DNA of 64,000 nt from Auanema rhodensis (lineage: Eukaryota > Animalia > Nematoda), in NCBI GenBank assembly GCA_964057225.1, contig OZ059896.1, positions 17,050,001 to 17,114,000 of the forward strand. The letters run 5' to 3'. The translations under genes and the position numbers were made by a program. The notes beneath the pieces were generated by a model that worked only from the letters and a program-made list of their open reading frames with translations, did no database searches and was not told the DNA's origin. Numbering within the stretch: the first letter of the stretch is position 1; the number at the start of each line of letters is the position of its first letter. Below, in pieces: positions 1 to 22,031 of this stretch.

Positions 1-2164
1 TGTCTTGCTAGAGATCGGGGGCAAATTTATGATGCCTCTGTTCAATTCAAGGAAGCAATGTCAATAAACCCCGGTCATGCTGACGCCTGGACTTTAATAG
101 GTAATTTGCATATGGCAAAACATGAGTAAGTTGATTTATAATTCAACATGTTTTGAACAATTTTTTATAGATGGGGACCAGCCCAAAAGAAGTTTGAGCA
201 CATTCTCAAACTTGGCGATCTCAAGCACGATGCCTACTCACATATAGCCTTAGGAAATATCTGGTTGGAATCTTTATTCAGTCCAACAAGAGATCGTCGT
301 AACGTATCATTTTTATATTCCTGTTTGCTTTGTTAATTTTCTGTATTTAGGATGAAAAATACATGGATCGTGCTATCAGCATGTTCGCTAAAGCTATCAA
401 AATTCAACCAAGAAATATGTGGGGAGCAAATGGTTTAGGTTGTGTATTAGCTTTGAAGAAACAATGGTTAGAAGCTAGAGATATCTTTACTCAGGTATTT
501 TTTCATTAATTGTTTAACTTATCGTTATTTATGTTAGGTTCGTGAAGCAACAGCTGAATTTTTTGATGTTTGGATCAACATTGCTCATGTATATATGGAA
601 ACTAGACAATACGTTCCAGCTATCCAAATGTAAAGTTCTCTCTTCGAAATTTAGGCAAGGTTTTTCTTATAGGTATGTCAATGCTATGAAGAAATTCGGC
701 CGAGAAAGTGATTCTCTTATGCTTATGTATTTAGCTAGAGCCTACTTCCGAGCTAGCAAGCTTCAGGAAAGTAGAGAAACTCTAGAGAAAGCTATCTTTG
801 AAGCTCCAGATAACGTGCAAATCAAGTTTAACCATTCTTTCATTCTAAAAAAAATGGCTAAAGAAACGTTGGAAGACGTAAAATCCACAACTAATATGGT
901 CAATGGAGCTATCGAGGATTTACGCACCGCTGAACGGTTTAGCTATCTGTCCATCCCTTGGTTTATTTCTTTATTTCAGTGTTTTAACTTACATTAGCAA
1001 TAACAAAGATGATAGCTTAAGCGGTGCTAGATATATATCACGTACATCAGCTGGAGAAGAAGCTCGTGAATGTAGGGATTTGTTGAAACAAGCTCAAACA
1101 TATCTTGCTCGCGCCCAGCAGCAAGACGAAGAGGAAAGTCGACTCAGAGCAAAACAAGAAGAAGTCTGTGATTTTATATTTTTCTTTCATTGTTTCTTAA
1201 TTGCAGGAGCGCTTATCGTTAATGCGCAAGATGCAAGAGGAACAACAAGAAAAAGAGGCCGAGCGATTACGAAAGGAAGATGAATTACGGTCTCTACGTC
1301 ATACTTATGTCAGTATGACAAAGGATATCTTGAAAATGCCAGAGGTGAGATATCATCCAACTATTCAACTCATATATGGTTGTAATTTTTTTCAGATTGT
1401 TGAAGAAAAGAAATCCAGAGGATATGGAAAGAAAAGGAAAGGAGGCGCCGATGAGGGCGAATTTGTTAACGACAGCTCTGATATGGGAGATTGGCAGGGT
1501 GAAGAAGGAGGAGAGCGAAAGGAAAGGAAGAAGAAAGACGTACTATATATATCTTATTTTCGTGGTGGTATAAATTCCTACTTTTCAGAAAGAATCCAAG
1601 AAAGCTTCTCGTAAACGTAGAGAAAAAAGAGAAAGAGGTGGAGGTAGTGGATCAGATCAAGATGATCGTAAAGCTGATAGACGAAAAAAGAAGGAGGAAG
1701 CTGCTGCTCGAAAAGCTGAATCTAAAATGTCAAAACAAAGTGCCAAATGTATGCATAAATTTGGATATTATCAAGCATACAAATTCATTTTGCAGTTAAA
1801 AGTCGTGCTTTCCTTCCATCAGACGAAGATTCTTCGGATGACAATGCTCCAGGACCTTCAGAACCAAAAGATGACTCAGCTGCAGCTGAATTTGAAGATA
1901 GTCCACCTCGGGCTCCAATCAGTAGCAGTGATAGTGACGATAGTGTACCAAAACCACGAAAGAAGAAGGTATTAGTAATGAAAAGTATATCCAAGTATTC
2001 TATGTTAATTTTAGGCTGCTGTGGATTCTGATGAGGAGTCTGATATGAATTCTGACGCGTCTTCCCCTGCCGTTAGGCCCTCCAGAAGAAGCGAAGATGA
2101 CAGTGAAGAAGAAGGTCCCAACTTAAAAAAGATTATCGCTAGTGATGATAGTGACTCCGACTAG
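1..2164 (+). CDS. ctr-9: CTR9 (Paf1 complex TPR subunit), 5'-truncated, multi-exon
   Basis: Spliced translation gives TPR-type segments: [88 protein letters not shown]. These are followed by a K/E/D/S-rich C-terminal tail. About 10 GT-AG introns of roughly 45 nt; stop TAG at 2162-2164. Confidence 0.93.
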
Positions 2165-2451
2165 ACTTTCTTAGATCATTTTTTCCGGTTTCTTTGCTTT
2201 CTAACCCGTGAAAATTATTTGTATGTCTTAGAAGGGTCTTATCTTTGAAGTACTAATAGTAAAACGTCCGTTCCCCATTCAAATGCATACTGTTGTACAA
2301 ATTATTTATTTCTACCAAGTTGTTGTTCACGTTTGTTAACATGCTGAAAAAAAAATTAAAAGTCTTCATGGTTTTGTTTTAGTTTCAAGCGATATCGCCA
2401 AGTTGTTTTCTCGGGAATCTAAATATGACAACTATTTCCTAACAAATTCAG

Positions 2452-5400
2452 ATGTCGGATGATGAAGAACAGACTTTCTCTCAACTTCAAGCTGAGCAAA
2501 ATAGAAAGCATAAAAAAGCAGGAGGATGGCAAGTTTTAGGTTTGTATGCTACCTTGTTTTTGATACAGTTGTTTCTCAAGGTCTCGATCATACTGTTTTC
2601 AAAGGAATTGAAAAGAAGGGTTTCAAACAGCCTACTCCTATTCAGGTTTTTATTAGGATTAACTAGCTTTCTTCATTTTTTTTTTCAGAGAAAAACTATT
2701 CCATGTATTCTTGATGGTAAAGATGTAGTCGCTATGTCTAGAACTGGAAGTGGTAAAACCGCTGCATTTGTTATTCCTATGTTACAAAAGTTAAAAAGAA
2801 GAGACACTAAAGGAATTCGTGGTTTATTAATATCTCCAACAAGAGAATTAGCTTTGCAAACTTTTAAAGTTGTGAAAGAGGTTTTATATATAATTTTCCT
2901 GTTCTAATGTAACAATTCAGTTTGGAAAATACACTGGCTTACGATGCGCTATTATGGTAGGAGGAGATGCTATTGAAGATCAGTTCTCCACAATTCATGA
3001 TAATCCAGATATGTGAGTTCAATTTTTATCTAATTGAATCATATATTATTTACATTCAGCTTAATTGCAACCCCTGGACGTTTACTTCACGTCGTAGTTG
3101 AAATGGACCTTAGATTATCTCAGGTTCAATATGTGGTATTTGACGAAGCTGATAGATTATTCGAAATGGGCTTTCAAGATCAATTAACAGTATGTGAAAC
3201 ATGCCTTCACTTGAGATGGTTTTGTATTATAGGAAACGCTGAAAAGAATTCCTGAAAATCGTCAAACACTTTTGTTCTCCGCTACTTTACCAAAAATGCT
3301 CGTAGACTTCGCTAAAGCTGGTCTTACAGACCCTATGCTTAGTAATTTTATAACGTATTAATTTCTCAAAAAATTTATATTCTTCAGTTCGCTTGGATGT
3401 TGACGAGAAAATTAGTGATAAACTTTCTATGGTTTTTGGTTTATCCCGAGTTGATGATAAGCTAGCTACTCTTGTTCATTTATGTCGTAAAATGGAGGAA
3501 GAGAAGAAACAAACTGTAGTATTCTGCGCAACTATGAAGCATGTAGAGTAAGTTTTTTGTTTTCTTGAAACTTCTTTATGGTTTTCTATTCAAGATATAT
3601 CGTTGGTGTTCTTCAACGTGCTGGTATTGAATCATCTTTCATCTACAGTCAGCTTGATGCTACCGCTAGAAAGATGAATATTGCTAGGTGATTCAAACGT
3701 TTGTTTCAATAACTAGATTTTTTTCAGATTTCACGACAAAGAAAATTATATTCTCGTTGTAACTGATGTTGCAGCTAGAGGTGTTGATATCCCATTCTTA
3801 GATACTGTACTGCTTGCTCTGTTTTGTGTTCCTATTATTTGCATTACAGGTTATAAATCTTCATTTCCCCCCCAAGGCTAAATTGTTTGTTCATCGAGTT
3901 GGTCGTGTTGCTAGAGCTGGAAGATCTGGAACTGCCATATCTCTAGTAGCCCCTGATGAGCTTCCATATGTGGCAGATTTATTCTTATTCTTCGGAAAGC
4001 CTATGCATTTTGCTAGAGATGAAGATAAATATAATGGTAAACCTTATAACAGTTGTGCAAAATTATATTTATTAATTGCAGAGAATTTAACTCTCATTGG
4101 ACGTGTTCCTGATGAAGTTGTATCTTTAGAAATCGAATTTTTGAATTCTATTCATGATAACAATGAGGATCTGGTAAGTTAAATTATAATTGATTATCTT
4201 ATCATTCTTACTTTTTTAAGTTGGATCTACGACAAAAGTCTAGAAATGCTATGATGAAGTATATGCGAACAAGACCACCACCATCTGCTGAATCAGCACG
4301 ACGTGTTAAGGAAGAACTGAGATTGAAAGCTCTTGAATGCTCAACTCATCCATTCATTCGTCTGGAAGGTGATCAACAACGATATGATATTCTTAACCAA
4401 TTAGCGAAATACAAATCTCATGCAGTAAGATTACAGTTTGTAACAAATAGTTTGTTATTTTTTTGTAGACCATATTCGAACTGAACATAGGAAGTAAAAC
4501 TCAAAGTGCACAAGTGATGAAGGAAAAACGACGTCATCATCAATTGTTCATAGAAGAAGCCACAGAAAAGAAGGTACTGTTACTAAATTTACAGCGGGAA
4601 AAAGATGTATTTAGGAAAGAGATAGGGCTGCCTTACAGGATAGAGCAATTGAAGAAGAAAAAGAACGAAATACTACAGTCGTAGAAGTTGGAGATGATGA
4701 ATTAGTGAGTTGAAACCTCTATAAATAAAGTTAATTGTTGCCTCCTAGGCTGATGTTTTTACAGCGGTTGTAAAAACAGCAAAATCCAATAACAGAATAG
4801 ATAGAGCTGAACAAAGACGAAAAGAAAAGGTACAACTCATTTTGTCTTAATAACTTGAAGTTTCATATTTCAGGAGCATCATTACTTATCTTATACTGCA
4901 GCTGATCATGCTTCTGAGAGTCAGTTAGCTCTTCAAAAGATTGATTTTGCTAAGCAAGCTGAAAACGCTGCTGTTGAAATTATTGGAGACGATGATAAAG
5001 GGATGTATAAACATCAGAATGCTAAAAAATGGTATATAAGCTATTCTCATTGGATAATTCACCCTATATATCTAGGGATCGTAAGAAGAAGAGATACGTT
5101 GGTGTTTCCGGCGATGATCCAGCTCAGAAGAAGATTAGAACTGAAGATGGAACATGGTTACCAGCTTCATACAAAACAGGAAGATATGAAGAATGGAAAA
5201 AGCAGCAGCGTATTGGTTTCAAAAAGGTATTTGTACCCAAAATGATACATATATCATTTTCTTATTAGAATGAAGACGGAGACGGAGAAGGCGATGAAGA
5301 AAGTTCAGCCCATCAAGGAGGACCCCGTCGTAATAAATGGGGCAAACAGAGAGGAAAGCAAACTGTAAGCCTCTAATTTTAATTACTTAAGCATTTATTT

Positions 5401-6026: not shown

Positions 6027-7087
6027 ATGTTTGAGGCTAAACTCGCTAACGCTTCTCTCCTTAAGAGAATTGTTGAGTCAATCAGGGTTTGTTTAGTACA
6101 GTCATGCTTCTTATTATTAGAATTATATAGGATCTTGTCAATGACGCTCCCTTCGATTGCTCCGAGTCCGCTATGTGCCTGCAAGCTATGGACTCTTCTC
6201 ACGTAGCTCTTGTATCCCTCAAGCTCGAGGTAATTCATTTTTTTCATTTCTAAAAGTACTAATGTATTTTAGGTTGGACTTTTCGAAACTTACAGATGCG
6301 ACCGTACTATCAACCTTGGAATTTCTTTGGGCAACTTGCTCAAAGCTTTAAAATGTGCTAACAATGATGATACTTGCATGATTAAGTATGAAGAAACTGA
6401 CGGAGATAGCATCAACTTGTGTTTCACCGACCCAAAGAGAGATAAGACCCAGGTTCGTTCTTTCGTTCAATTGCAGCTTATCTTTGTCGTTTAAGGAGGT
6501 CACTATTAAAATGATGGATATTGATAGCGAACATCTTGGTATTCCCGAGCAAGATTACTCGGTTGTTTGTGAGATGCCTTCTGCTGAGTTCCAGAAGACA
6601 TGCAAAGATCTTGCTATGTTCTCTGATTCCATGAACATCACCGCCACTAAGGTTTCAGCTTGAGTGAGCTGACGATTGTTAATGTCTTTGTTTCAGGCCG
6701 GAGTTACCTTTACCGGAAAGGGAGATTCAGGACAAAATGTCGTCACTTTCGCTCCATCAGGTGATGCTGATAGCGAGAAAGATGTAAAAATAAAAAGTAT
6801 TCGAAAAATTAAAATATACTCTGGATTTTAGGCTGTAACTGTTGATGTTAAGGAGCCAGTTAATGTTAATTTCTCCATTAAGTATATGAGTCAATTTACT
6901 AAGGCTACTCCTCTTTCTGATAGAGTTCGCATTTCATTGTGCAACGAAGTTCCAGTCGTTATTGAGTAAGTCAACTGCTTTAAATGCAATATATACTTGC
7001 CCTAGGTACCCAATTGAGGACAACGGATACTTACGTTTCTACTTGGCTCCCAAGATTGATGATGATGATGATGCTAACATGGAATAA
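6027..7087 (+). CDS. pcn-1: Proliferating cell nuclear antigen (7 exons)
   Basis: [53 protein letters not shown]...[11 protein letters not shown]...[15 protein letters not shown]...KATPLSDRV...[20 protein letters not shown]. Six introns of 40-48 nt; stop at 7085-7087. Confidence 0.98.
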
Positions 7088-8474: not shown

Positions 8475-11400
8475 ATGAATACACCATTTACGGGAATAAT
8501 GCTTTCTATTTTTGGTAATTCTGTTGAATATTGCTTAAGCTTTGAAAAGTTTACATCGATCGTTGCAGTTTTCTCATTTTTAATACAATTGTCTGAATCG
8601 AATACATGGAATGTGATAAGTCAAGATAATTGCCTGGAACATCGTTCCATATGCCTGAGAGATGAACGTTGTAGCTTTCATTTTGAGACATTTGAACGAA
8701 CTTGTGGATATTCGTTAAGTAGTAAGTATTGAGAATAAATTTTTCCTTTTCTCATGTTTTTTCCGGATAATATGATTGATAGAAACAACTTTTCTTTTTT
8801 AGGTTGTTCAGTACCATCTCCTTCAGATTGTGTAGTAGTAATACGAAAGATTAGAGATTTTTTTCCATATCAGAAGTGTGTATGTTATGAAGCTTTAGGT
8901 AAATTTTCGTTTATATTCATACGAATGATTTTTTCTTTCAAAGGTCTAACAGAAGACTGTGATTTTTTCCGTGAATTAATCTGGAATCATCCATGTGAAC
9001 GACGACTTAAAGATGCTGGGCGAAAGCATCTTCGTTTAGAACGGTAATACATTACAAGTTATATTATACAATTAAAACTATTTTATAGAATAAACAATCG
9101 TCCTGGTCAGACAATCAGCTTATTTACACCTGAGCCACATCGTCGTCGAACCACTCGTGTTCCTTTATCTGACCAAGTGCAACAATGGAAATCCCAACTT
9201 AGTGGAGGTTTGTATAGATTTCATCGTCCTAGCTATTTTTCCGCTAAAAAAACTTTTATGGAGAAGAAAACATTTTGGTGAAAAGTTTTTTGAAGATAAT
9301 TAGCTGAGCAAAAACGATCACTTCATAGCTCCTTGAAGAAAAATTAAATTTTCATTGATTGAAGTTTTTTCGTTTTTTGAAAAGTTAGATATTTAAGAAG
9401 AGTTATTACATGAAAAACTGGAGATAATTTTGAATTTGAACCAAAAACTTTCAGATTTGGAAACACGTGAAATGATAAGTCAAGGTACATGCAATGAAGC
9501 ATTGAATGATGTTTGTCTTACCCATGTCAGTTGTCGACAACTTTGGCGTCTTTTCCGAAGTAGTTGTGGAGTAGACGAAGAAAATAAGTGCACAATGGCA
9601 GATAGGTAATTTAGTTATATGATATAGTTAACAACATATTATATTATTCTAGAGAAATATGTTGGCAATCATTTGAAGGATTAACTTGGACAGGATTGGG
9701 TAACTGTCGGTGTGATTCCAATAACTCTGATTGTCATTGGATTCGTTTACATACTAATTATAATAAGTGTATATGTAAGTATATTATGTAGTTAATGTTC
9801 TCTATTTTCACAATATCATGTATTTTTTTCTATTTGGATAATAATTTCAGATGAAATTTCTAAAAGTGGTCAACAATCTGGTAAATCATCTTATAAAACA
9901 GCTCAGCAGTACCAGCAACGATATGAAACACGCATAGCTGAAGATAATCGAAAGCAGGAACAACATAATGTGCCGTACTATTATCAGGCAAAGCCTACAA
10001 CATCTAGTCAAGCATCTAACAGCCGTACTCCACCATCTTCATGGGTTCCAAATAAATATTCAACTTCTGATACCCGGTATCTTTCCTTTTTTTTGTTATG
10101 TTAAATGTTTTCCCATTAAGAACATTGACAACATCGTCTTCATACAAGGAGGAAAGCTCTGTTCGTACAACGATTCCTCCTTGGTTTACCGGCCTGGAAG
10201 CATCACAATCAGTTCCAAGTTCTTCAAGATATCAGCAGACATTGCATTCATCGTCGGCATCATCTCAATCATCAACATCAGCAAAAAATTCTTCAAGGCA
10301 ATCTGCTGGATATCATCAAACTACGTCATCTCCTCCTTCATCATCATCCCTACCTTCATTGTCCTCGTCATCGTCATCATCTACATCTTCATCAATCAGC
10401 GACCAACATAAGGCAGCTTCTACTTATTTTTTACTTTTGTTTGTATTTTATCTAATAGATTGAAATATGTATATGTATAAATATATAAATATATATATAC
10501 ATATAATAGTATATGAATGTCCTCGTTCTTCATACAAAAAATTTCTTAAAAATTATTTTTTGTTTGTCAATTGTCCAATTTAATAAAGTGTCGTTAATTC
10601 TCACATGTTAACTAGTCACTCTAAAACATAAATTTCCCCTTTTCACCATTTGTGTGTTTGTTTGCTTTGCTTTTTCTCATCTGGTCTCAACTTTTTTTCA
10701 TTTTCTCCAGGTTTTCTATCGACCTCTTTTCAATCAAACTATGGAAAACAACCAAAGATCTACCAGTAGTACAGGTGCTATTTCAAATAATTATGAATCA
10801 ACACCATATCAACGAATTCCTCCGAATTATCCAGATCGGAACAGAGTAAGTTTGTATCTCATTCCCTTCTAGTTGTACTCGAGTTTAGAGATGATCCCTT
10901 TCAAAGATAATTCATTCGCTGTCCTCTTTCTTAACCCTTACAAACTTCATTTCCTTAAAATTTTCGAAACTTTTCCATCTTTAGGAGTCAAATTGGCAAC
11001 ATCCGTTAATGAGTCAGATGACAACCCCAAAGACATTTCTAATTGGCAGTAACAACAACCAAACAAGGTAAAAAGTCGAAAGCCTTCTGTCTCGAGGGTA
11101 ATAAGCTAACAATGAAGCCAATTATGTTCTTCCTTGTTGTATTTTCGTCCTTATTTTCATTTTAACTTCCCTTCTTCAGATTTCCAACATACACGCCTCC
11201 TGTTCAATCGTCATCATCAGACATAACATCTTATAATATGTATCCGATTAAACAGACAAGGAAGATGAACAATTCTGAGAGTAAGAATGTTCCAGAGCAT
11301 AGTTCAAACTCTAGATCTGATGTACGTTTGGGATAATTTGCAAGTAATCTTGTTTTCTTTCTTCTATCTGCAGGCCATACACGGTGGATTCGTTGTGAAA

Positions 11401-14400
11401 GTTCGTCAACAAGAGACACCAAGAAGAGATCCAACAAGGGATTCAACTTATTCAACGAGCTCCAATCAGAATTATCTTCAAAGACATAGTGAATATACAA
11501 CTTCTACAAGACCTATTGATTATCGAAATTCATCCGGATATAGGACATCAGCTCCGAAATATGATTATTCGGTTACTCGTTCCCCACCCTCAGCATATAA
11601 CAATCATCATAACGTACACTCTGGAAGTAATAGGATCTCAAACACAGAATACAGTTCAGCACCAAATGATAGATATAATCCATTTGTATACAAAGAATCT
11701 AGTAGTTATCAGAAAAATTATATAACATCCACATCAACACCTACTTCCACAAGCCGCACATTTCCTATGACTACGACAACTACGACAACTACTACATCCA
11801 CATCTTCTCCATTTCCGACGTCAATGGCTCATCATCAAGAATCTCGAATTGAATTCCCGACAAAATTCCAGGCGAAGAATCCAGCATCAAGTGAGTTTTT
11901 TTTTCGCAAAGTTCATTGTTCAGTACAACTATTTAAAATCTTGTGGGTTTCCTTCTTTTGTCTTTCCTATTGCGCATGAAATAACTATTTTTTTCGCTTG
12001 AATGATTTGTTCCATTTTATTTCAAAATAAAATTGAACTTTCAACCTCCAAAATTTGGAAAAAAAACTTCGGAAAAGTATATTTACCTGTGTGTATTGCG
12101 AAACTTCTATTATGACTTGTATCTTGTGCTCACTTCTCTTCTCATAACTGGCTATTATGTAGCGGATAATAATATTTCTGATATAAGCATATCTTCCCCT
12201 GCCCTTTTTTCTTTTGCCACAGATATTCAACTTCAATTTTGTCTTTTTAATATTGGAAAATCGCTTTTTTTCAAAATCTGAAAGCATATCTACTTGTCGG
12301 AATGTGTCAGAGTGTGATGAATGACAACTTAAACAACGAGCTAGACTTTCAGATAGCTTTTTGTACAATTTCGTTTGAAAAAAAAATGCACCTTATGACA
12401 CTATGCATGGATCGTTTACTGTCAATAATACGAAACATTGAGAGATTGTCACTATCTCAGCTTCCTTTCTATGGCAAATTTATGTCAAACTCTTTAGATC
12501 TTGGCCTTTTGTGTGGCTATGATCAACATCAAGCATCCAACTAAATAGCTAAACTAGCCTGCTTATAGGCCCACTAATTGAGACATTTAGACAATTTTCC
12601 AAGTTTGAAAATAGGTTTCCGGATGGCAAGTTAAAAGAGAACGTTTGTCTGAGATCCAGTCAAGAAGCTGAAAAAAAAATAAAAGAAAACTTAAAGTTGC
12701 TGCACTTCTTCGTTAAGAAATTTGTTGGAAAATTCATTGAAAAATATAAAAAATCCAATATATTATTTTGGCTTTTTCCACATTTTTGAAAACGTTTTAA
12801 TGGAATTCTTCAGTTTTTCTGGACGACATGAAAAAAACCAACAAAGTATAGCTTTGTCTGGAAATATCTCAATGAGAGTGCGAAAGTGGAGAATACTCCA
12901 TTCGATTTTTTAAAATAAATTATTGAGAAAAAATGCTTATTCTCTGCTCTACTACTCTATTTCGCTACTTCTGGAGATTGAATTGCACATGATGAACCAC
13001 ATATCTGACCTTCTTCACACATACACTTCAGTTACAGGCATCATTACGATCATCTTCAATCTGCTCCTAATTTTGCTTCCCCTCATCATCATCATAATTG
13101 TTAATGCCGCCGGTCGTCGTTGTCCTCGTTGCTGTGTCTTGTCGTCTGCCTCATCAACAGAAGACGTGGTCACAAAAAGTATGCTGCAGCAAGCTCAGAC
13201 ACAGCTGCAGCAGCTCCGTTCGATTCAAGTTAGAGCCGTCTTTTATTCGTCTGACTGAATAATTCAACTTTGGCTGCTGGTCCATGGGTCTGCTTGACTC
13301 CTGGCTTTATGGCGTAAGCGGTTCTTTCGTCTTCTCTGTCGTTCATTCATCAAGTCTCAAGATTGTCATGCTTTTCACAGCAAAATATTGAATCGACGAT
13401 TAAAGAGTCGTTACAAAGTCCTTGAATATCGGTTTTATGGTTTATAAAAAGAAGCATGGGTGCAAGAAGTTAAAAAAAGGACAAAAAAGATTAAACATTT
13501 TGAAGAACAGATCATTCTACTTTGATCTTTCTCTCTCCTACTCAGTAAGCTCCGTCAGGCTCTATTATGGCAACCTTTTCCGCTTTTTTTTAATTTTCAA
13601 CTCTATGAAACTGGAATCGTTTAAAAATAGTGTTGAAATACGCATATGAGACTTTTATAACCAAATAATCTATGAGAAATATATGAGATTATTCTGGAAT
13701 AAGTGGCCCAAAATATCCGGAGGCAATACTTAAAATCGGTCGTTCGAAGTTTTGAAATGATGCTCGTCTGGCAGTCCCCGACGAGCTCCATCAGGAGCAT
13801 CATGATCGAAATAGTTTTTTTCTTTATTCCTTCACCTCTCGAACCACCATTTCCCATCATCTGAGCTCTCAACGGAACTTTTTCACGAACAATTCGTCCG
13901 AAATGGCATCGGCAAGCAAGGCGTAGTTGTCTTTCGGAGGAAGATTGTGCATGGAAGAAGAAAAGAGGTAAATCGGTTAGAAGTGCTTTCAATAAAATTT
14001 CTTAAAGAAGCTGTTGAAATACATTAGAAGCAGATGAAAGGAGGGCGAAATATAATGATGACCAAAAAAGGAGTAGGCGGAAGAAGCTTCAGACAATTTT
14101 TCTTCAGGAGAAGTTCGGCGAGAAAGATAAAAAGACTAGATGGGAGGAGAATCGAAATGAAAAAAAAAGAATAAAGACGAGAAAAAAATAGGAGAGAATG
14201 AGAGAGTTATGTGTTGAGAAAGTTATATAATGAGAGAGAGGCGCGAGACAGACAGACGGATAGAGGGGGAGAGAAGGAAAGAGAAAGAGAGAAGCAACAT
14301 AAGTTGAAGAAGAAAGCTTTTGACAAAGGGGCGGGACCAATGCTGCGCTTGCACAGCATCAACTAGCTTTCCCTCTTTCTCCTTCTTTTACCCCTTTTTC

Positions 14401-16157
14401 TTCTGTCGCCTGGTGGTACGGGTCTTCTGGTTTGCCGTTCTCGTCTCCCATCTCAAGACTAGGGTTGTCGCAACCATTGCTGTTACTTTTTATTTATTCA
14501 TCTACAGTAAGCTAGGATATTCTTACGCACGTCTATGAGCAGACCGAGACGAGCACGTATTCGATTGGTTCTCTCACCATCTTATTCATCCAACGACAAC
14601 GGCATTACACGGAAGCGCGTGTTACCGGAGCAGCAACATCAGCACGATAGTGACCACGCGGGCAACACGTCGTCCGATCGTCTGCGGTAGCAGAACTCAG
14701 GGACAGGCGTGTTTGAAGGTGTTCACGTCGACCCCATCCCATCAGCAAACCTTTCCACCAAATTCGTCTACAGCATCACAGTCGTTGTCGTTGGTATCTG
14801 AATCAACAGCACCTGTTGTCAGGCTTCTTGCATCCTCCAATTATTATGTTTCTGAATCATTATTCAGCATTTCTATACGTTCCCCTACGAGTTTCAGCAA
14901 AAGTATTAAGAACTATATACGGTTTTTACCAAATCGTATGATTTGCCATGTGTTCGTATCGTTACTAATTATTTGTCACATTAATTCTGCAGCTGCTGTT
15001 CATCAACTTCCACCAGGTTTTTATATTTTTACGTTAAATGTATTCGTTTCTTCTGATATTATTGATAATAGTCTTACTTGCTTCATAACTAATACTACTT
15101 GTTCCATTTTTGCTTATTTACGTTTTTGTGAGGCTTAAATGCTCATATATACCGGTATAAAGACAAAACACAGACAAAAACATACAAAAACTGAGAGAAA
15201 GAGAGAGACGAGAATGAGGCCGGAAGCGGAAAAACGGCTGCGGGTGGTTGTCTTCCTGACAATTGCATGGATGAAACTTGGAAAGCACTAGTGTGAAGCT
15301 CCCCTTGAGGCTATTTCATCGTCCCCTGGTGGTCGAATGTTTCCGAAAAAGTGCCCATTGGGGTTAGAATAGGAACAACTCAGCCGAGCAATCAATTAAT
15401 CTGAAGATATGTTGTCAAGTAATGCACAAACTGACCTCCTTCTTCACTTCTATCCATATTCGTTTTTTCTCCGTGCTCACGTATGTCTTGAAATTCCAAT
15501 TTTGCCATCACGTCCGCGTCTGGCCACGAATTGTTTTCCCCATTTCATTTTCAGGTCTAGGAGAAAATACGAGTCAAGAAAAGAGACTTTCTTATCCTCA
15601 CTCACTCACTCTCTAAAATCTATCTAGTTTTTTCTCTCTCCCTTGCTACTAACCCCTACTACTTCCTCACCCATTTTTGGAAGTAAAAATCTTGGCTGTG
15701 AGCATATAGAACACCTAATCGAGTTCAGTCATTATTGTTTGAAATCGTCTATAGCCTTGTATGTTGTTTAATTCTTCGTTTTTTTTTTGTTTTGAACCTA
15801 ACAAGAGGACAAATAACTCCAAGAGTCTGAGTAAGAGTATTGAGACTCTCCAGTTTTCATAGCATTTTTCTTTTTTCCTTCCCTTTCTTTCTCATTTCTT
15901 CTTTTTTCTCTCTTTACTTCTTATTCTTTTGGGCTTAGAGATGTCCCACATTGGTCGAGCTGGATGGGACCCAACTCCTGCAACCAAAAGGCCTTAAGAT
16001 GAGTAGATGGTGACTGCGGGGAGTAAGAATAGAGTACATAGTAGCTACTTCCAGCGATGAAGTGAGCGGAGAAGCGAGAATGAAAAAAAAAGGAAAAATG
16101 GGACTGCGGGGTATAGATAGGCGATAGTGAGAGGGATAGTGATAGTTAAGTAAGTTA

Positions 16158-16215
<58 letters not shown>

Positions 16216-16761
16216 GGACTACAAGTAGAGAAGAAAAAATTACAAGAATGAAAAACAAAATTAAAGTTGTTTTATATAATTACCTTTAGTTTCGGATAGA
16301 AGCCACATTGATACTTATGACTTTTATTCAATCAAATATATATTATTTCATTTGTAGTATTCTCCTATTTACATGTAAGAATAGGAAAAATAATTTAGAA
16401 TACATTTGAAATTTTCTTTTCTTTTTGTATCGCTAATTCAATTATTTTCATTTTTTTTTCTGCCTTAGCTTTTTTAATTTTTGTTTCAATCTATTTACTG
16501 TATCTGTGACAATAGGAAATTTGAAAAAAGAAAGAGTTGAAAAACAAAAAAAAACAAAGAAAAATGAAAAATCCATTTTTCCAAATTAGAAATTATAATT
16601 TCAGGTTCAAGTTGCCAATTAGCTCTAAGCAAATGTGATCAAACTGAAGATTGTCGCTGGCATTTAGGTGAACTACGTGTACGCTGTGCTAGACCATCAT
16701 GTCGTCGCGAAGATTGTGCTGCGGTAATATTTCAATTTTGAAATGCTTTTGCACTCAAAGG

Positions 16762-16797
<36 letters not shown>

Positions 16798-19700
16798 TTC
16801 ACGTGTGTTAATAGCACGTGAGAGTCGACATGTCTACCATTTTTGTTATTTTCACGTTTTACATGCAAACAATCGGTTGCTTTTAGCAAGAGGAAAATTA
16901 ATATTTGTCTCTTATTCGATAAAAAAACTTTTTTTCCTGAGCGTTTTTTTGTTTGTTTTTTTAAATTTTATTCACTACTTATCCCTTTCTTTAGAGTACT
17001 TATCCTTTTGCTCCCAACCTATTTATAAATGCCAACTTTTTTTTCGAAAAAATTGTTTGTATGAAAACTAAAGTTCATTATCTTTTTCTTTTTCATTTTT
17101 TTTTGAAGTTGCAGCTAAAGTTCTGTTTTTTTTTTGTTTTGAATGAAAAATAGCCAAAACACTCTAAAAGGAAAGAAAACACTAAATTACTGCTTCATAG
17201 TTAATCAACAGATGTTGCTGCTTCTAGTTCTACTATCTCAAATTCAATGTGTGAAACATCTAGCCTAGAAAGAATAAACTAGAATCAAGATTCGTTTGCA
17301 ACTTCTAAACACTGTTTTCATAGTTTTGTTTTGTTTTTTCCTTCTGTTTTCTTGAACGTTTCTGCGTTGAGAACGGAATGGATGATGAAAAGAAGGAAGG
17401 ATAGAGAGATTGGAAAACTTTTGTTAAGCTACATGAAGCTATTTGAAACTAATAACAGAAATTCCCATTTTTCAAAGTAATCATGATTTGTTATTCTTGA
17501 AAAAAAGTTTCAAAACAAGAGAAGTTTGAGCAGTACAGACGGAAAGGATTGAGAAACAAGAATGGAATAGGTTGAAATAACTGGTGCTGAGCCGCTAGGA
17601 AGAGAGTAAAAGCGATGTAGATGAAGAAAATAGTGAATAGATACTTTGTTGTCTTTTTTTAAATATTGAGGAACAGAAGAAAAGCTAGAAAAAATGGAAA
17701 AAAACCTGAACAACAAAATAAAAGTAGCATTGTTTTTCAGGCTTTACAACGGTTTTCACGATATGTGCCATACGAACTAGTTGAAGCAATTATGTTTTGT
17801 CAATGCTCTGCTTATGATGTTAACTGCTCAGAGCATCAGGTAACGTTTCATCTATTAATCAAAAAAATTGTATAATGTTGTTGGGTAAAGAAATTCGGCT
17901 GTGTAACCTCAGTGAATTGCGGCCAAGTTTGTCTATATTCCTATTCCAATTTAGAGCACAATATTGAAAAAAATTCATTCGTTGCAACTGAGAAGATCAG
18001 ATTAAAGGTTAAAAAACAATAGAAAAATGCGTCAAAACTTGAGCAAATTCGGTTAGACAGCGCTTCAAATTGACTTTGATTGAAAAATATCTACCAGAAA
18101 CTTTTTTCAGCCTAAAATCGAGCAGCATTTCCTTCCATTTTAATAGTGTGCATGTGATTGATTCGAGGGTCACTGAGCATTATTTGAAAAGTGGATATTG
18201 CTCTTTATTGGAAGTCATGTGTCAAATTTAAATTGAATACTAAAAAGAATAAGTTTATTGAAATAAATTGAAAAAAGAAAAGGATAAGCTGATGAATATC
18301 ATAAGCTGTTTCTTCTTATCTGATTTAGTTGTATACAAATAAAGTATCAAAATAATGTGTAAAAGAGAGGGAAGGTAAAAAAGGAGTTAAATGAGAAAAA
18401 TAGAGTTTTCGAAATCTAAATCTTCTTATATTCTCACTTGTATATTCATTGGTACTTTCATCTTTTATCATGCTTCAAAATAGTTTTCACGTAACATTCT
18501 CAATTCTACGTGAGATTTCAATGAAAGCGTTTGCAAACTTATTCTTAATAATTCATTTGCACTGAATGGTTGTCTTCTCTCACAACTTCCTTCTAAAATC
18601 TTTTCATTTCCTTGTTGTCGTTTTTCTATTTTTTTTATAGTCAACGAAAAGCAATCATGTTCAGAAATCTTGAAAGATAAGATAAGAGATGTTTAATTAA
18701 GTGAAAACTATTGCATATGTATTCAAATGCCTATAGTCCATGCTTCTAAACATCTTTTTACATACAAAAAGTAAACTTTCAGGATGTCCTATATCCAAAA
18801 TGTCTTTATGCTTCATCTCAACCTGTCCCAACTTGTACCCAAACAAATCGCAAATGTGAAGCTGATCCAAAGTGCAGGTAAGAATAAAATAAGCATAAGA
18901 AAACTTTTTTTTTCATTTTCCTTTTTTTCCAGACATTTATTACGCTCAGTCGCCAGTTTCTGTCCAGTATCAAATGGTGAATGTATTACATCAAACTTAA
19001 CTCAATGTAGGCAAACTCTGTTAACTGCTAGGTGAGTAAGTCATAAAGCTTGTAAATGCTTATGGATATACATAAACTTTTTTTGTTTTATAAGTATTAC
19101 CTAATACTTTTTCTCAGCATATAGTATATAGTAGTGTATAGTTAGTGCATATAATTAAGCCTTTTCAGAGCTTCTATACTAGAACAACCATGTTTTTGCC
19201 CATTTTCTGATGTAGAATGTATATCATATCAAAGATTAATGATACCAAATAATCCTTGTATAGGTATATTAATTATAAAAACTATTGGTTTTTCAAGCTG
19301 AATAACCGATTTTGTTTTCAGAAAAATCTATGTTAGATTACTCGCGTGTATATCTACGTCCGTTTACTACTAGTGCACATACAACTGAAAAAACTCCAAG
19401 TAATTTTGAAACAAATAGGGTACAAGATATTCTACCATTATATGTAAGCTATAATATAGTTTACTTAATTATATATGTATGTTTATTTTAGAAATCTATT
19501 GATGATAAGAGTTACCGAGTTGGGGAAGAACATGGAAAGTCATCGAAAGTTAGGCCATTAACAACCTCAACAACAACTCAACCAATGACAACAACATTAC
19601 CAGAAGAAGTTGCAAAGCAATCTGGGTACGAGATGACATTGAAATAGATAGTTTTATTCAACTATGTTTGTTTTGTGTTTAGAAGGAAAACGACGAAAAA

Positions 19701-20885
19701 GTTTCGTACTACTACAGCCAGTCCTCCTACAACATCTGAAGCCCCTCCACCATGGATTACAACGACTACATCTGCTCCAACCACGACAACAACCTTCATG
19801 ACCCACGCACCTCCTCCTCCAGGTATCAAGAATTTGAAAGAAGGCTTAAATTATTTGGGTTTTCACTTTAGAAGGTTGCACAACAAGAGATGCTAATGGA
19901 CGATGGATTTTTGCTCCAGTGGGAACAGTTATTCGTCGTTATGTAGATTGGTCAGGACGTTGTTCATCCTGGTGTGAATGTGTTGATGAGAATGAATTAG
20001 CTTGTCAAGTAGTACCATGTCTAGAAGAAGGACGATGTGAAGCTCCGTTAACATTTGTTGGTTCGTTTCTTTTCATTAATTCTCTGTAATGTCTGCTTTT
20101 AAGAATTCGGTGAACGAATATTCTTGAAAGATCGAGGAGCTTGCTTCTGTGAATCTTCACAATTCATTTGTGAATATCCAGAAGACATACCCGAACTTTA
20201 TCCAGGTTAGAGCATAAACATAACGCACTTACACCACTTGTTCTAGGATTGTATATCTCAGCTGGTTACTCAGGCCTTGATGTAGAGATGCTTCGAAAAG
20301 AGGTTCCATCTCATGTTCTTGAAAAAGCCGGTTTCTTATCAGCTGATGGTGCCACTGATATTGCAAGTCGGCTTCAAATAGCTTTTGAACGTCTATTGCC
20401 TGATGTATTATCAAAACTCAATTACCTGAATAATCATCTATTTTCACAGGACATTCAATGTCGTGTAGTACTTTTACCTGAACTCAGTGATGTTGGAAGT
20501 GCTTTTCTACGAGTTGAATGGTATGGAATGAATAAATTACTGAATCACACAAAAACTCAATGGCATTATGGCGATGCGGAAAAGGTATAAGCATCTAAAT
20601 CAATATAAACTTTTGTTCAATTGAATCATTTATTTAGGTCTGCTCACCTTACGTCGTAAAGCTTGCTGATCAGTTTGCTCAAGGCGATTCGTTACGGTAT
20701 CAACTAGTGTTGTCAACCGTTAAACAGATTAAAGTACATTTGAAAACCATTTTTTATCTAATATAATGAATTAATTATAGGTCATCGATTATCTGGATGG
20801 TCTGCCGAAATCGGCAGCGGCATCTGTAGTGGTCTCCATACTTCGAGTCATATCCCTTATTGTTATCATGAACTTACTTTCCTGA
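8475..20885 (+). CDS. GDNF-family-receptor-like (4x GDNF/GAS1 domain) secreted protein with S/T-rich stalks, RECK-like C-terminal region and GPI-type tail
   Basis: Signal peptide MNTPFTGIMLSIFVFSFLIQLSES after removing intron 8515-8568. Four Cys repeats of the form C..(6)C..(5)C......C...C...CxC...C...(N/P)xC: CLEHRSICLRDERC...KCVC...WNHPC; CNEALNDVCLTHVSC...NCRC...YNKC; CQLALSKCDQTEDC...FCQC...YPKC; CTQTNRKCEADPKC...PCFC...NNPC. Then a Thr-rich stalk, a Cys module at 19872-20205, and the hydrophobic end PKSAAASVVVSILRVISLIVIMNLLS* (TGA at 20883-20885). Splice phases are consistent throughout, except that the join at 10412 needs a GC donor. Confidence 0.8.
14328..14336 (+). promoter_or_regulatory. 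GC box (Sp/KLF-type) at the start of a GC-richer island; candidate internal promoter
   Basis: GGGGCGGGA is followed by about 450 bp of CpG-containing sequence, then a TTTCAG acceptor (14892-14897) and a signal-peptide exon (ATG 14938). Confidence 0.45.
14938..15016 (+). CDS. Putative alternative first coding exon (signal peptide) of the GFR-like gene
   Basis: MICHVFVSLLIICHINSAAAVHQLPP ends in a phase-1 donor CAG|GTTTT at 15016/15017. This matches the phase-1 acceptor of the GDNF domain-3 exon at 16605. Confidence 0.65.
16164..16212. repeat. (GA)n microsatellite
   Basis: Uninterrupted AG dinucleotide run. Confidence 0.95.
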
Positions 20886-21166
20886 ACACATAATTATTTC
20901 CAAATTTTAATTCTCTTTCAATATGATAGATTGAAGATATTATACGAAATTTGTTTTTTTTTTATTAAAAAAAACAACAAAATATTTATTTGAACAGAAC
21001 AGAACAGAATACATACATACATAGATATGTGTATGTATAAACATCATAACATGTCCATGAATATATATTATATATATATGTACTGAATAAGAACATATAG
21101 AAATAAGACATTCTTCTTATACTAATATATATTATATGAAATATGTATTTCATTGTTTAATCCTTT

Positions 21167-21230
<64 letters not shown>
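21167..21230. repeat. (CT)n microsatellite
   Basis: TC run with one interruption. Confidence 0.95.
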
Positions 21231-21237
<7 letters not shown>

Positions 21238-22031
21238 TCTTTCTTTCTCTTCTTTTTTTAAAAATTTTAATATTTCTAAAGAATTCTAATATTATTTCAC
21301 AGATTTCTGCCCAGTGCCTTTGACATATTTATTTTAAAATATGTTATCCTAGTATACTTGTGAAAAGTTACAAAACCAGGTCTTCTGTTTTATTATTATT
21401 ATTTTATTTTATATTGTTTAGTTAAAGTTCCATTGGCTAGAATAAACATTGTTTTCTGAAAATTTCACTTCCTTATTATACGTTAACGCTTAGTTTCCAC
21501 GTGTGCAATGACGTGAACTGTGAATACACGTGAATATTTTTCCGGAATGTGATTCATTTTCACATAAGTTGTATAGAGAGCGGTTGAATATACAAATGTA
21601 GTAGAGCATAATATAGTATTTCGAATTAATATGCTGTCGTGGATTTAGTGTGTATGTCTGTCTGTTGATAGATGAACGATATTCAGTTCTCGAAAATGCG
21701 TCAACAATTTTTTTTTCATTTTCTTAAACTTTTTTTTCTTGACAATATGAAAAACAAAATTTTGTATTCTTTCTTTTCAACTTCTAATGAGATTGCAAGC
21801 ATTTTACAGCCGTCAGATAATTATAAGAGCTACTCTCTACAATCTGCAAATTGCTCTTTTTTTTCTTGATTTTCAGCATTTTTTGTTAGTTCTAATAAAT
21901 AATTACATTCAAACATGTAGTCGAGTTGTAAATATCAATAGAATTTCTTCTTTTTATAAATATAAAAAACAAATGTATCTTTATTTTAATTTAAAAATTA
22001 GCAACTTCATAAAGTATATTGAAGTCTAATA

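What the first reader, a model, noticed from the sequence alone, without database searches (positions are those of the whole stretch)
8475..20885. GFRalpha/GAS1 repeats fused to a RECK-like C-terminal half: a hybrid GPI-type receptor
Seen: four GDNF/GAS1-type Cys domains. They are followed by the module GCTTRDANGRWIFAPVGTVIRRYVDWSGRCSSWCECVDENELACQVVPCLEEGRC...FGERIFLKDRGACFCESSQFIC and a terminal domain GLYISAGYS...QCRVVLL...CSPYVVKLADQF...LVLSTVKQIKV before a hydrophobic tail. From memory of vertebrate RECK, the first module matches its GC...GTLI...C..C.C...L.NC...C...C...G...C.C...VC module. The last domain matches RECK's ...QCDV...C..EAEKI..LI...PLS.. pre-GPI domain. RECK's Kazal motifs and N-terminal CC domains appear to be absent. 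Inference: GFRalpha-type ligand-binding units sit on a RECK-type membrane-proximal scaffold, in a phylum with no recognised GDNF ligand. It could link the RET co-receptor and RECK families. It may instead be the orthologue of insect Gfrl, whose C-terminus I cannot check here.
Basis: partly seen in the sequence, partly recalled or inferred. Interest (0 to 1): 0.8.

Follow-up and report, generated by a model that had tools for sequence, protein, structure and literature searches.

The report
Worm Gfrl receptor with RECK-like stalk
This is the nematode version of the fly cell-surface receptor Gfrl (C. elegans Y69A2AR.31), an already annotated but unstudied gene; its previously unexplained membrane-proximal half folds like the C-terminal part of RECK, a protein that nematodes are said to lack.

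Summary
On the + strand, 8475-20885 carries one multi-exon gene of at least 25 exons. Every internal junction is AG/GT and in phase. The exons map one after another onto abutting residues of Auanema sp. JU1783 protein P0068 (1196 aa). They are collinear with C. elegans Y69A2AR.31.

The product has a signal peptide and four GDNF/GAS1 (GFRalpha-type) domains in two pairs, separated by Ser/Thr-rich spacers. Then come two small Cys modules, an alpha/beta domain and a GPI-signal-like tail.

This is the invertebrate Gfrl architecture, conserved across nematodes and, by cluster annotation, arthropods. It is not a hybrid peculiar to this genome.

The RECK idea survives a structural test. An AlphaFold model of the orthologue's C-terminal 244 residues (pLDDT 90) matched its own family first. 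Next came two RECK clusters (TM 0.67 and 0.65, 215 and 210 residues aligned). Everything else scored 0.36 or less.

The unit reads as fibronectin-type-I, fibronectin-type-I, then a SEA/MAD-like membrane-adjacent domain.

No sequence or profile search reached RECK, and RECK's CC, Frizzled-like and Kazal parts are absent. So this is a shared C-terminal cassette, not RECK membership.

Read evidence could not be obtained. I found no paper linking Gfrl and RECK.

The parts
8475..8721 (+). Exon 1: start codon (ATG 8475, or 8499), signal-peptide-like hydrophobic stretch, first part of GFRalpha-like domain D0
   Evidence: ORF and sequence. Maps to P0068 residues 2-58, 69% identity. Pfam GDNF E 0.0065 on the exon alone. 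The exact start codon is not settled.
8803..9043 (+). Exons 2 and 3 (8803-8898, 8944-9043): rest of D0
   Evidence: AG/GT, in phase. They map to P0068 60-90 and 92-123 at 84% and 88% identity. D0 of P0068 scores Pfam GDNF 35.9 bits and has the GFRalpha fold.
9089..9207 (+).
   Evidence: Restores the reading phase between 9043 and 9455. Maps to P0068 125-163, 62% identity.
9455..9774 (+). Exons 5 and 6 (9455-9605, 9653-9774): GFRalpha-like domain D1
   Evidence: 90% and 95% identical to P0068 165-213 and 215-254. Pfam GDNF is only 17.5 bits in P0068, but the domain is HMM-similar to D3 in three orthologues. The model of this domain is poor.
9851..11890 (+). Ser/Thr/Gln-rich spacer between the two domain pairs: exons 9851-10076, 10121-10211, 10711-10845, 10985-11067, 11374-11890. 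Boundaries between 10077 and 11373 are only partly resolved.
   Evidence: Weak but ordered matches to P0068 256-635. The phases between 11067 and 11374 do not close, so a small exon is probably missing. The donor GTGAGT at 11891 joins in phase to the acceptor at 16604.
14938..15016 (+). Candidate alternative first exon with its own signal peptide (MICHVFVSLLIICHINSAAAVHQLPP + split Gly). It would give a short isoform starting at D2.
   Evidence: Phase-compatible with the 16605 acceptor. Strongylid gene models P0064 and P0073 start MIFCLSLLAIITD...G|SSCQ, directly before D2. The donor GTTTTT is weak and there is no read evidence.
16605..17839 (+). Exons 16605-16723 and 17741-17839: GFRalpha-like domain D2
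   Evidence: 87% and 91% identical to P0068 638-676 and 677-709. Pfam GDNF 29.4 bits in P0068.
18783..19263 (+). Exons 18783-18877, 18933-19031, 19169-19263: GFRalpha-like domain D3
   Evidence: 87%, 72% and 97% identical to P0068 710-805. Pfam GDNF 22.6 bits in P0068.
19322..19822 (+). Exons 19322-19443, 19492-19625, 19683-19822: second spacer, ending in a Thr/Pro-rich mucin-like stretch
   Evidence: All junctions AG/GT and in phase. They map to P0068 807-935. DmGfrl has Thr stretches predicted as mucin-type O-glycosylation sites at the same place (PMC3527400).
19872..20060 (+). Exon for Cys module 1 (fibronectin-type-I-like, six Cys) and the first strand of module 2
20104..20205 (+). Exon for Cys module 2 (Pfam DUF7921, fibronectin-type-I-like, four Cys)
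   Evidence: Pfam DUF7921 E 3e-4 on the window exon, and hits in 28 of 28 orthologues. Model residues 3-93 align to the fibronectin 2F1-3F1 pair.
20247..20733 (+). Exons 20247-20404, 20450-20584, 20638-20733: alpha/beta (ferredoxin-like) membrane-adjacent domain with two invariant Cys. 20405-20449 is a 45-nt in-frame intron.
20781..20885 (+). Last exon: VIDYLDGLPKSAAAS followed by a hydrophobic tail (GPI-attachment-signal-like), stop TGA 20883-20885
   Evidence: Sequence. Small residues followed by a hydrophobic C-terminus are seen in most of the 28 aligned orthologues. GPI anchoring was shown experimentally only for DmGfrl (PMC3527400).

Best explanation
The region is one gene, the nematode orthologue of Drosophila Gfrl and C. 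elegans Y69A2AR.31.

It encodes a secreted protein that is most likely GPI-anchored. Two pairs of GFRalpha/GAS1-type helical Cys-rich domains (D0-D1 and D2-D3), probably the binding units, are held away from the membrane by two Ser/Thr-rich spacers that are probably O-glycosylated. Next to the membrane sits a compact stalk. It has two fibronectin-type-I-like Cys modules (Pfam Fn1_3 type and DUF7921) and a ferredoxin-like domain of the SEA/MAD kind.

This three-domain stalk has the same fold and domain order as the C-terminal part of RECK, so the two GPI-anchored families probably share an old C-terminal cassette. The rest of RECK (CC repeats, Frizzled-like domain, Kazal motifs) is absent.

Shown: the gene structure, the orthology, the domain folds and the structural match to RECK. 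Inferred: GPI anchoring, glycosylation and function.

The fly protein acts with Ret and the TGF-beta ligand Maverick and interacts with FasII/NCAM. By analogy, I propose the worm protein is a co-receptor or adhesion partner. Its stalk would mediate cis-dimerisation or docking to a membrane partner, as MAD12 and the EpCAM/TROP2 C-domain do (my own knowledge of those proteins, not tested here).
For: One gene:
- Every internal junction is AG/GT and in phase. The 25 exons map to abutting residue ranges of P0068 and are collinear with C. elegans P0010.
- Full-length models in Haemonchus and Necator have the same order, and the 5'-truncated Ancylostoma model matches from D1 onward.
- A transcript-like Logan contig carries an uninterrupted 3978-nt ORF that joins GDNF domains with the C-terminal unit.

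Identity:
- P0010 is named NP_500240.2 / CELE_Y69A2AR.31.
- GDNF plus DUF7921 is found in all eight full-length homologues scanned.
- Arthropod 'GDNF family receptor alpha-like' clusters carry GDNF + DUF7921 + Fn1_3.
[quoted passage not shown] The same paper mentions a C. elegans Gfr-like protein of more than 1000 aa (PMC3527400).

Folds:
- D0 matches GFRalpha structures.
- The C-terminal model has pLDDT 90 and pTM 0.86.
- It contains FnI-like modules and a SEA/MAD-like domain.

RECK: arthropod and chordate RECK clusters match at TM 0.67 and 0.65, with 215 and 210 of 244 residues aligned. The next unrelated rows are at 0.36 or less.

Function in flies: Myers et al. 2018, as cited in PMC7017013.
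Against:
- The RECK link rests on one shape search between predicted models. That tool gives no target coordinates, and I could not repeat it.
- No RECK Pfam family and no RECK protein was reached by any sequence search.
- The model is of the orthologue P0068, not of the window's own joined product. P0068 is 85-94% identical to the window over this unit.
- Arthropod orthology rests on Pfam and cluster annotation, not on an alignment made here.
- The second GFRalpha-like domain is below Pfam's cut-off and was modelled poorly.
Confidence: 0.75

Rival explanations
1. The RECK resemblance is analogy, not common descent. Two FnI-like modules followed by a ferredoxin-like juxtamembrane domain would have been assembled independently in Gfrl and RECK, or the shape match is inflated because both sides are predictions.
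Against: 215 and 210 of 244 residues superpose at once over all three domains, so the order and relative orientation are shared. Two separate RECK clusters (arthropod, chordate) score 0.67 and 0.65, while everything else is at 0.36 or less. In Gfrl the unit sits directly before a GPI-type signal. RECK is also GPI-anchored (PMC12842694), but where the matched part lies in RECK is not known from the tool.
Confidence: 0.2
2. The window holds two transcription units rather than one. An upstream gene would carry D0-D1 plus the mucin spacer. A downstream gene starting at the internal signal-peptide exon near 14938 would carry D2-D3 plus the RECK-like stalk. The long form would then be an annotation artefact.
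For: A phase-compatible exon with a signal peptide lies in the 4.7-kb intron. Strongylid models P0064, P0073 and P0066 start just before D2, and two of them share a conserved signal peptide.
Against: The 11890 donor (GTGAGT) and the 16605 acceptor (TTTCAG) join in phase and reproduce the P0068 residues SPAPSS|SCQ. Long models exist in C. elegans, C. briggsae, Auanema, Haemonchus, Necator and Parascaris. The transcript-like contig of P0034 carries D1, D2/D3 and the stalk in one ORF. DmGfrl itself has isoforms with different signal peptides (PMC3527400). Both forms probably coexist.
Confidence: 0.08
3. It is a hybrid peculiar to this genome, made by exon shuffling or by an assembly join between a GFRalpha-like gene and a RECK-like gene.
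For: None beyond the first impression of two unrelated halves.
Against: The same architecture is found in many nematode genera from Plectus to Caenorhabditis, Ascaris relatives, Strongyloides and Heterodera. By cluster annotation it is also found in arthropods.
Confidence: 0.02

Closest known systems
Drosophila Gfrl (DmGfrl; Kallijarvi et al. 2012, PMC3527400)
   Same: Both have four GFRalpha-like Cys domains, Thr-rich mucin-like stretches, a long region between the fourth domain and the anchor, and a hydrophobic GPI-type C-terminus. Arthropod GFRalpha-like clusters carry GDNF + Fn1_3 + DUF7921, as the nematode family does.
   Different: No fly sequence could be fetched, so no direct alignment was made. 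Nematodes have no RET (my own knowledge), so the Ret/Maverick partnership reported in flies cannot apply as such. The worm protein has a very long Ser/Thr/Gln spacer between D1 and D2.
C. elegans Y69A2AR.31 (NP_500240.2, UniProt Q95XG5; 'GDNF/GAS1 domain-containing protein')
   Same: Collinear over its whole length with the window gene. Identity is 50-85% in the domain exons and 53-73% in the C-terminal unit.
   Different: The linkers are shorter in C. elegans. The gene is uncharacterised, and no paper in the library names it.
[quoted passage not shown]
   Same: Both are GPI-anchored. The last 210 or so folded residues of the Gfrl stalk superpose on RECK models at TM 0.65-0.67, covering two small Cys modules plus an alpha/beta domain.
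   Different: No CC (cysteine-knot) repeats, no Frizzled-like domain, no Kazal motifs and no RECK Pfam family were found. No sequence-level match was found. RECK is reported absent from nematodes (PMC12842694).
Vertebrate GFRalpha1-4 and GFRAL
   Same: The ligand-binding domain type is shared. The D0 model matches GFRalpha1 domain 3 at TM 0.70, 22% identity. GFRalpha1-4 are also GPI-anchored.
   Different: By my own knowledge of the solved complexes, the vertebrate proteins have three, two or one such domains and only a short linker to the anchor or TM helix. They have no FnI-FnI-SEA-like stalk and no mucin spacers.
GAS1 / C. elegans PHG-1
   Same: GDNF/GAS1-type domains and a GPI anchor.
   Different: GAS1 has two domains and no stalk (my own knowledge). 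The window gene is orthologous to Y69A2AR.31, not PHG-1.
Membrane-adjacent ferredoxin-like domains: SEA, protocadherin-15 MAD12, EpCAM/TROP2 C-domain

Membership tests
Invertebrate Gfrl (GDNF receptor-like) | Four GFRalpha/GAS1-type cysteine-rich domains | tested here: met
   P0068 Pfam GDNF scores are 35.9, 17.5, 29.4 and 22.6 bits. The window exons are 69-97% identical to these. D1 is similar to D3 by HMM. The D0 fold matches GFRalpha. D1 alone is below the Pfam cut-off.
Invertebrate Gfrl (GDNF receptor-like) | Long C-terminal region after the fourth domain, carrying Fn1_3 and DUF7921 as in arthropod GFRalpha-like proteins | tested here: met
   DUF7921 E 3e-4 on window exon 20104-20205 and in 28 of 28 orthologues. 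Arthropod clusters carry the same families. Fn1_3 itself did not hit in the local Pfam scans. The FnI fold was shown by structure.
Invertebrate Gfrl (GDNF receptor-like) | Thr-rich mucin-like stretch before the stalk | tested here: met
   Exon 19683-19822 encodes TTTASPPTTSEAPPPWITTTTSAPTTTTT. Compare the DmGfrl Thr stretches.
Invertebrate Gfrl (GDNF receptor-like) | N-terminal signal peptide and C-terminal GPI anchor | tested here: inconclusive
   A hydrophobic N-terminus, and small residues followed by a hydrophobic tail, are present. No signal-peptide or GPI predictor is available here. Anchoring was shown by PI-PLC only for DmGfrl.
Invertebrate Gfrl (GDNF receptor-like) | Direct sequence orthology to Drosophila Gfrl (reciprocal best hit) | not testable with these tools
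   No arthropod Gfrl sequence could be fetched. Word and HMM searches returned nematodes only.
RECK | Five N-terminal CC (cysteine-knot) repeats | tested here: not met
   No CC4_RECK or RECK N-terminal family was found in P0068 at E<=1, nor in eight orthologues at E<=0.01. The N-terminal half consists of GDNF domains.
RECK | Frizzled-like cysteine-rich domain | tested here: not met
   No FZ_RECK or Fz hit.
RECK | Kazal motifs | tested here: not met
   No Kazal family hit in full-length orthologues or in 28 C-terminal regions at E<=10.
RECK | C-terminal folded unit before the GPI signal | tested here: met
   Shape search: RECK clusters at TM 0.67 and 0.65, with 215 and 210 of 244 residues aligned and rmsd 4.0-4.1. 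This is by fold only, and the target residue range is not reported by the tool.
Vertebrate GFRalpha RET co-receptors | Binding of a GDNF-family ligand and of RET | not testable with these tools
   DmGfrl did not mediate RET phosphorylation with mammalian GDNF (PMC3527400). RET and GDNF-family ligands are not known in nematodes (my own knowledge).

The most novel reading that the evidence does not exclude
Gfrl and RECK, two GPI-anchored co-receptors (Ret/Maverick and Wnt7/GPR124), would descend in their membrane-proximal halves from one ancestral FnI-FnI-SEA-like cassette. In nematodes, which lost RECK and have no RET, that cassette would survive only in Gfrl. There it might carry a RECK-type activity, such as docking to a membrane partner or control of metalloproteases. 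By position, RECK's poorly matching 'Kazal 2/3' region could correspond to the FnI-like modules.
Probability: 0.2. Interest if true: 0.8.

Novelty: new member of a known kind. Interest (0 to 1): 0.5.

Why it matters
The gene itself is ordinary. It is one more orthologue of an annotated, unstudied nematode gene of the Gfrl family.

What is worth keeping is the reading of its C-terminal half.

[quoted passage not shown] Here it resolves into FnI, FnI and a SEA/MAD-like domain.
- That unit matches RECK's C-terminal part as a whole.
- A 2026 RECK review states that RECK is absent from nematodes and lists this as an open puzzle. It does not mention GFR proteins (PMC12842694).
- I found no paper that holds both RECK and Gfrl in a relevant sense.

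If the match reflects homology, it gives a shared, testable module for two co-receptor families. It also gives a C. elegans handle (Y69A2AR.31) on what that module does.

Tried and rejected
- Read evidence: four runs of one study hold 25-32% of the sampled words of 14900-20899. No letters of 16936-16973 were sent to any search tool afterwards. My scripts read the window only locally.
- PDB sequence searches with the two C-terminal exons and with the family profile gave only chance hits.
- The atlas feature search on the single exon 20249-20584 was uninformative, with scores of 0.83 or less.
- Foldseek against the PDB with the C-terminal model found nothing at E<=0.001, and the wide VIA search listed no RECK. 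Apparently no RECK C-terminal structure has been solved.
- Three word searches and one full HMM search returned nematode proteins only. The weak non-family rows P0045 and P0050 are spurious.
- I could therefore obtain neither RECK nor arthropod Gfrl sequences by reference. I did not run a profile-profile comparison and did not type sequences from memory.
- RECK Pfam families: no hit. TILa (8 members) and VWC (7 members) hit weakly, which fits a small Cys-rich beta module.
- The D1 model was poor (pLDDT about 50), so its fold was not tested.
- The exons between 10077 and 11373 could not all be closed in phase.
- Myers et al. 2018 could not be read.
Full report
**What is there**

The + strand between 8475 and 20885 contains many short open stretches rich in cysteine. 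Reading the splice sites by hand, and checking each exon on its own against the closest full-length relative, gives a chain of 25 exons. Every acceptor is AG and every donor GT. All junction phases fit, except inside the low-complexity spacer between 10077 and 11373.

Successive exons map to abutting residue ranges of protein P0068 of Auanema sp. JU1783 (1196 aa). The ranges run from residue 2 to residue 1196, and the one-residue gaps are the split codons. Identity to P0068 is 84-97% in most domain exons (69-72% in two of them) and 35-66% in the spacers.

The same order is seen against C. elegans P0010, against the full-length Haemonchus and Necator models, and from D1 onward against the 5'-truncated Ancylostoma model. 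P0010 is NP_500240.2 / CELE_Y69A2AR.31, named only 'GDNF/GAS1 domain-containing protein'. Earlier notes of the scan call this genome a nematode, and the relatives agree.

**The observation**

I add two corrections.
- An exon at 9089-9207 was missed. It is needed to keep the frame between 9043 and 9455.
Its 15 residues are absent from the 28 orthologues aligned.

The four GDNF/GAS1 domains are real.
- Single window exons give only weak Pfam hits, because each domain is split.
- In P0068 the four domains score 35.9, 17.5, 29.4 and 22.6 bits against a cut-off of 22.
- The weak second domain is similar to the fourth by HMM in three orthologues.
- A model of the first domain (pLDDT about 90) has GFRalpha1, 2, 3 and GFRAL structures as most of its top 25 Foldseek hits. 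TM is 0.70 to GFRalpha1 domain 3, although E-values are weak.
- The second domain was modelled poorly, so its fold is not shown.

**One gene or two**

The donor GTGAGT at 11891 and the acceptor TTTCAG ending at 16604 join in phase. They reproduce the P0068 sequence across the 4.7-kb intron.

Long gene models that join all four domains to the C-terminal unit exist in many nematode genera. One relative, P0034, is encoded as a single 3978-nt ORF on a 4273-nt Logan contig. That looks like a transcript, and it carries D1, D2/D3 and the C-terminal unit together.

Inside the large intron, 14938-15016 encodes a signal-peptide-like start that is phase-compatible with the 16605 acceptor. Two strongylid models begin with a conserved signal peptide directly before D2. 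A short isoform therefore probably coexists with the long one, as in fly Gfrl, which has isoforms with different signal peptides (PMC3527400).

I used the orthologue P0068 by reference instead.

**What family**

Every full-length relative scanned has GDNF domains followed by Pfam DUF7921. DUF7921 hits 28 of 28 C-terminal regions and the window exon 20104-20205 itself.

The nearest ESM-Atlas clusters by features are one nematode cluster and two arthropod clusters. One arthropod cluster is named 'GDNF family receptor alpha-like'. All three carry GDNF, DUF7921 and Fn1_3. Their scores are 0.79-0.83, so this is a lead rather than proof.

The cloned fly protein DmGfrl is GPI-anchored. It has four GFR-like domains, Thr stretches predicted as mucin-type sites, and a long unexplained sequence before the anchor. 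The same paper notes a C. elegans Gfr-like gene of more than 1000 aa with four such domains.

**The RECK question**

By sequence there is nothing.
- No RECK Pfam family hit at E<=10 in 28 C-terminal regions.
- No CC, Frizzled-like or Kazal family was found in full-length proteins.
- A full HMM search with the last domain, and three word searches, found nematodes only.

By structure the answer is different. An AlphaFold model of P0068 residues 932-1175, built on 34 sequences, has mean pLDDT 90 and pTM 0.86. It shows two small beta modules and an alpha/beta domain.

In the shape search of ESM-Atlas cluster representatives, the model's own family comes first (TM 0.88). Next come an arthropod RECK cluster (TM by query 0.67, 215 residues aligned, rmsd 4.0) and a chordate RECK fragment cluster (0.65, 210 residues, rmsd 4.1). 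All other rows are at 0.36 or less and cover only the last domain.

Because more than 200 of 244 residues superpose at once, the three domains share order and relative orientation with RECK.

Against solved structures:
- Foldseek on the PDB found nothing significant, so RECK's C-terminal part is apparently not solved.

I could not fetch any RECK sequence by reference, so no profile-profile comparison was made. The atlas tool does not say which RECK residues are matched. The chordate hit is a 490-residue C-terminal fragment with Kazal and EGF2_RECK families, so the match lies in RECK's C-terminal half. Placing it between the second and third 'partial Kazal' motifs and the GPI site is my inference from position (PMC12842694).

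**How it probably works**

Shown: a secretory-type N-terminus, four GFRalpha-type domains in two pairs, two Ser/Thr-rich spacers, a compact three-domain stalk, and a C-terminus with small residues followed by a hydrophobic tail.

Inferred:
- The protein is GPI-anchored and O-glycosylated, as shown for DmGfrl by PI-PLC and lectin binding.
- The GFRalpha-type domains bind a partner at a distance from the membrane.
- The stalk mediates cis contacts next to the membrane, as such domains do in protocadherin-15 and EpCAM/TROP2 (my own knowledge).

In flies Gfrl interacts with FasII/NCAM. It is reported to act with Ret and the TGF-beta ligand Maverick (Myers et al. 2018, cited in PMC7017013; the paper itself could not be read). 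Nematodes have no RET (my own knowledge). NCAM-1 or a TGF-beta-family ligand are therefore the natural candidates. This is untested.

**Novelty**

The gene is a new member of a known family, and its C. elegans orthologue is already annotated, though no paper in the library names it.

The RECK-like reading of the Gfrl stalk is not in the 2012 Gfrl paper, which has no mention of RECK. It is not in the 2026 RECK review either. That review states RECK is absent from nematodes and calls this a puzzle. No relevant paper holds both words.

Domain databases may already record part of this through Fn1_3, DUF7921 or a RECK FnI family. I could not check that here.

**Verdict**

The 'hybrid' is a family-wide architecture of Gfrl, and its RECK-like half is supported by fold but not by sequence. 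Interest is moderate. It rests on the possible shared cassette between two GPI-anchored co-receptor families.

Noticed in passing
window 14938-15016: A signal-peptide-like exon (MICHVFVSLLIICHINSAAAVHQLPP) lies inside the 4.7-kb intron and is phase-compatible with the D2 exon at 16605. Strongylid models P0064 and P0073 start with a similar conserved signal peptide joined to G|SSCQ. This is probably an alternative promoter giving a D2-D3-stalk isoform.
   Followed up: partly
window 20405-20449: A 45-nt intron in frame and without stops, so it reads through as 15 extra residues (VLSKLNYLNNHLFSQ). The genomic ORF fragment P0001 of a related species shows a similar read-through insertion at the same place.
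   Followed up: yes
P0013 (942 aa) and P0063 (Necator, 1284 aa): P0013 continues after the Gfrl stalk into three PAN domains. P0063 carries a precomputed PC4 family hit (PF02229) in addition to GDNF. Both look like gene-model fusions with a neighbour rather than real architectures.
   Followed up: no
window 542-1614, 2452-4182, 6388-6663 (+): Upstream neighbours, read from ORF translations only: TPR-type exons that fit the 3' end of CTR9; a DEAD-box helicase (GSGKTAAF and [10 protein letters not shown] motifs); and an exon that looks like PCNA.
   Followed up: no
window 15935-16258, about 16760-16800, 21136-21323: Long CT/GA dinucleotide runs, read as SLSLSL or ERERER in ORF lists, in the introns and just downstream of the gene.
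   Followed up: no
window 10077-11373: The Ser/Thr/Gln-rich spacer exons do not all close in phase (11067 ends in phase 2, 11374 starts in phase 0). P0068 residues 392-412 and 436-474 have no counterpart found. One or two small exons are probably still missing.
   Followed up: partly
L001 (Logan contig of run SRR3401450), 120-4097: A full-length Gfrl homologue (P0034, 1325 aa) encoded as one uninterrupted ORF on a 4273-nt contig, so it is transcript-like. The source organism is not given. It has the highest DUF7921 score among the eight full-length homologues scanned (30.2 bits).
   Followed up: partly
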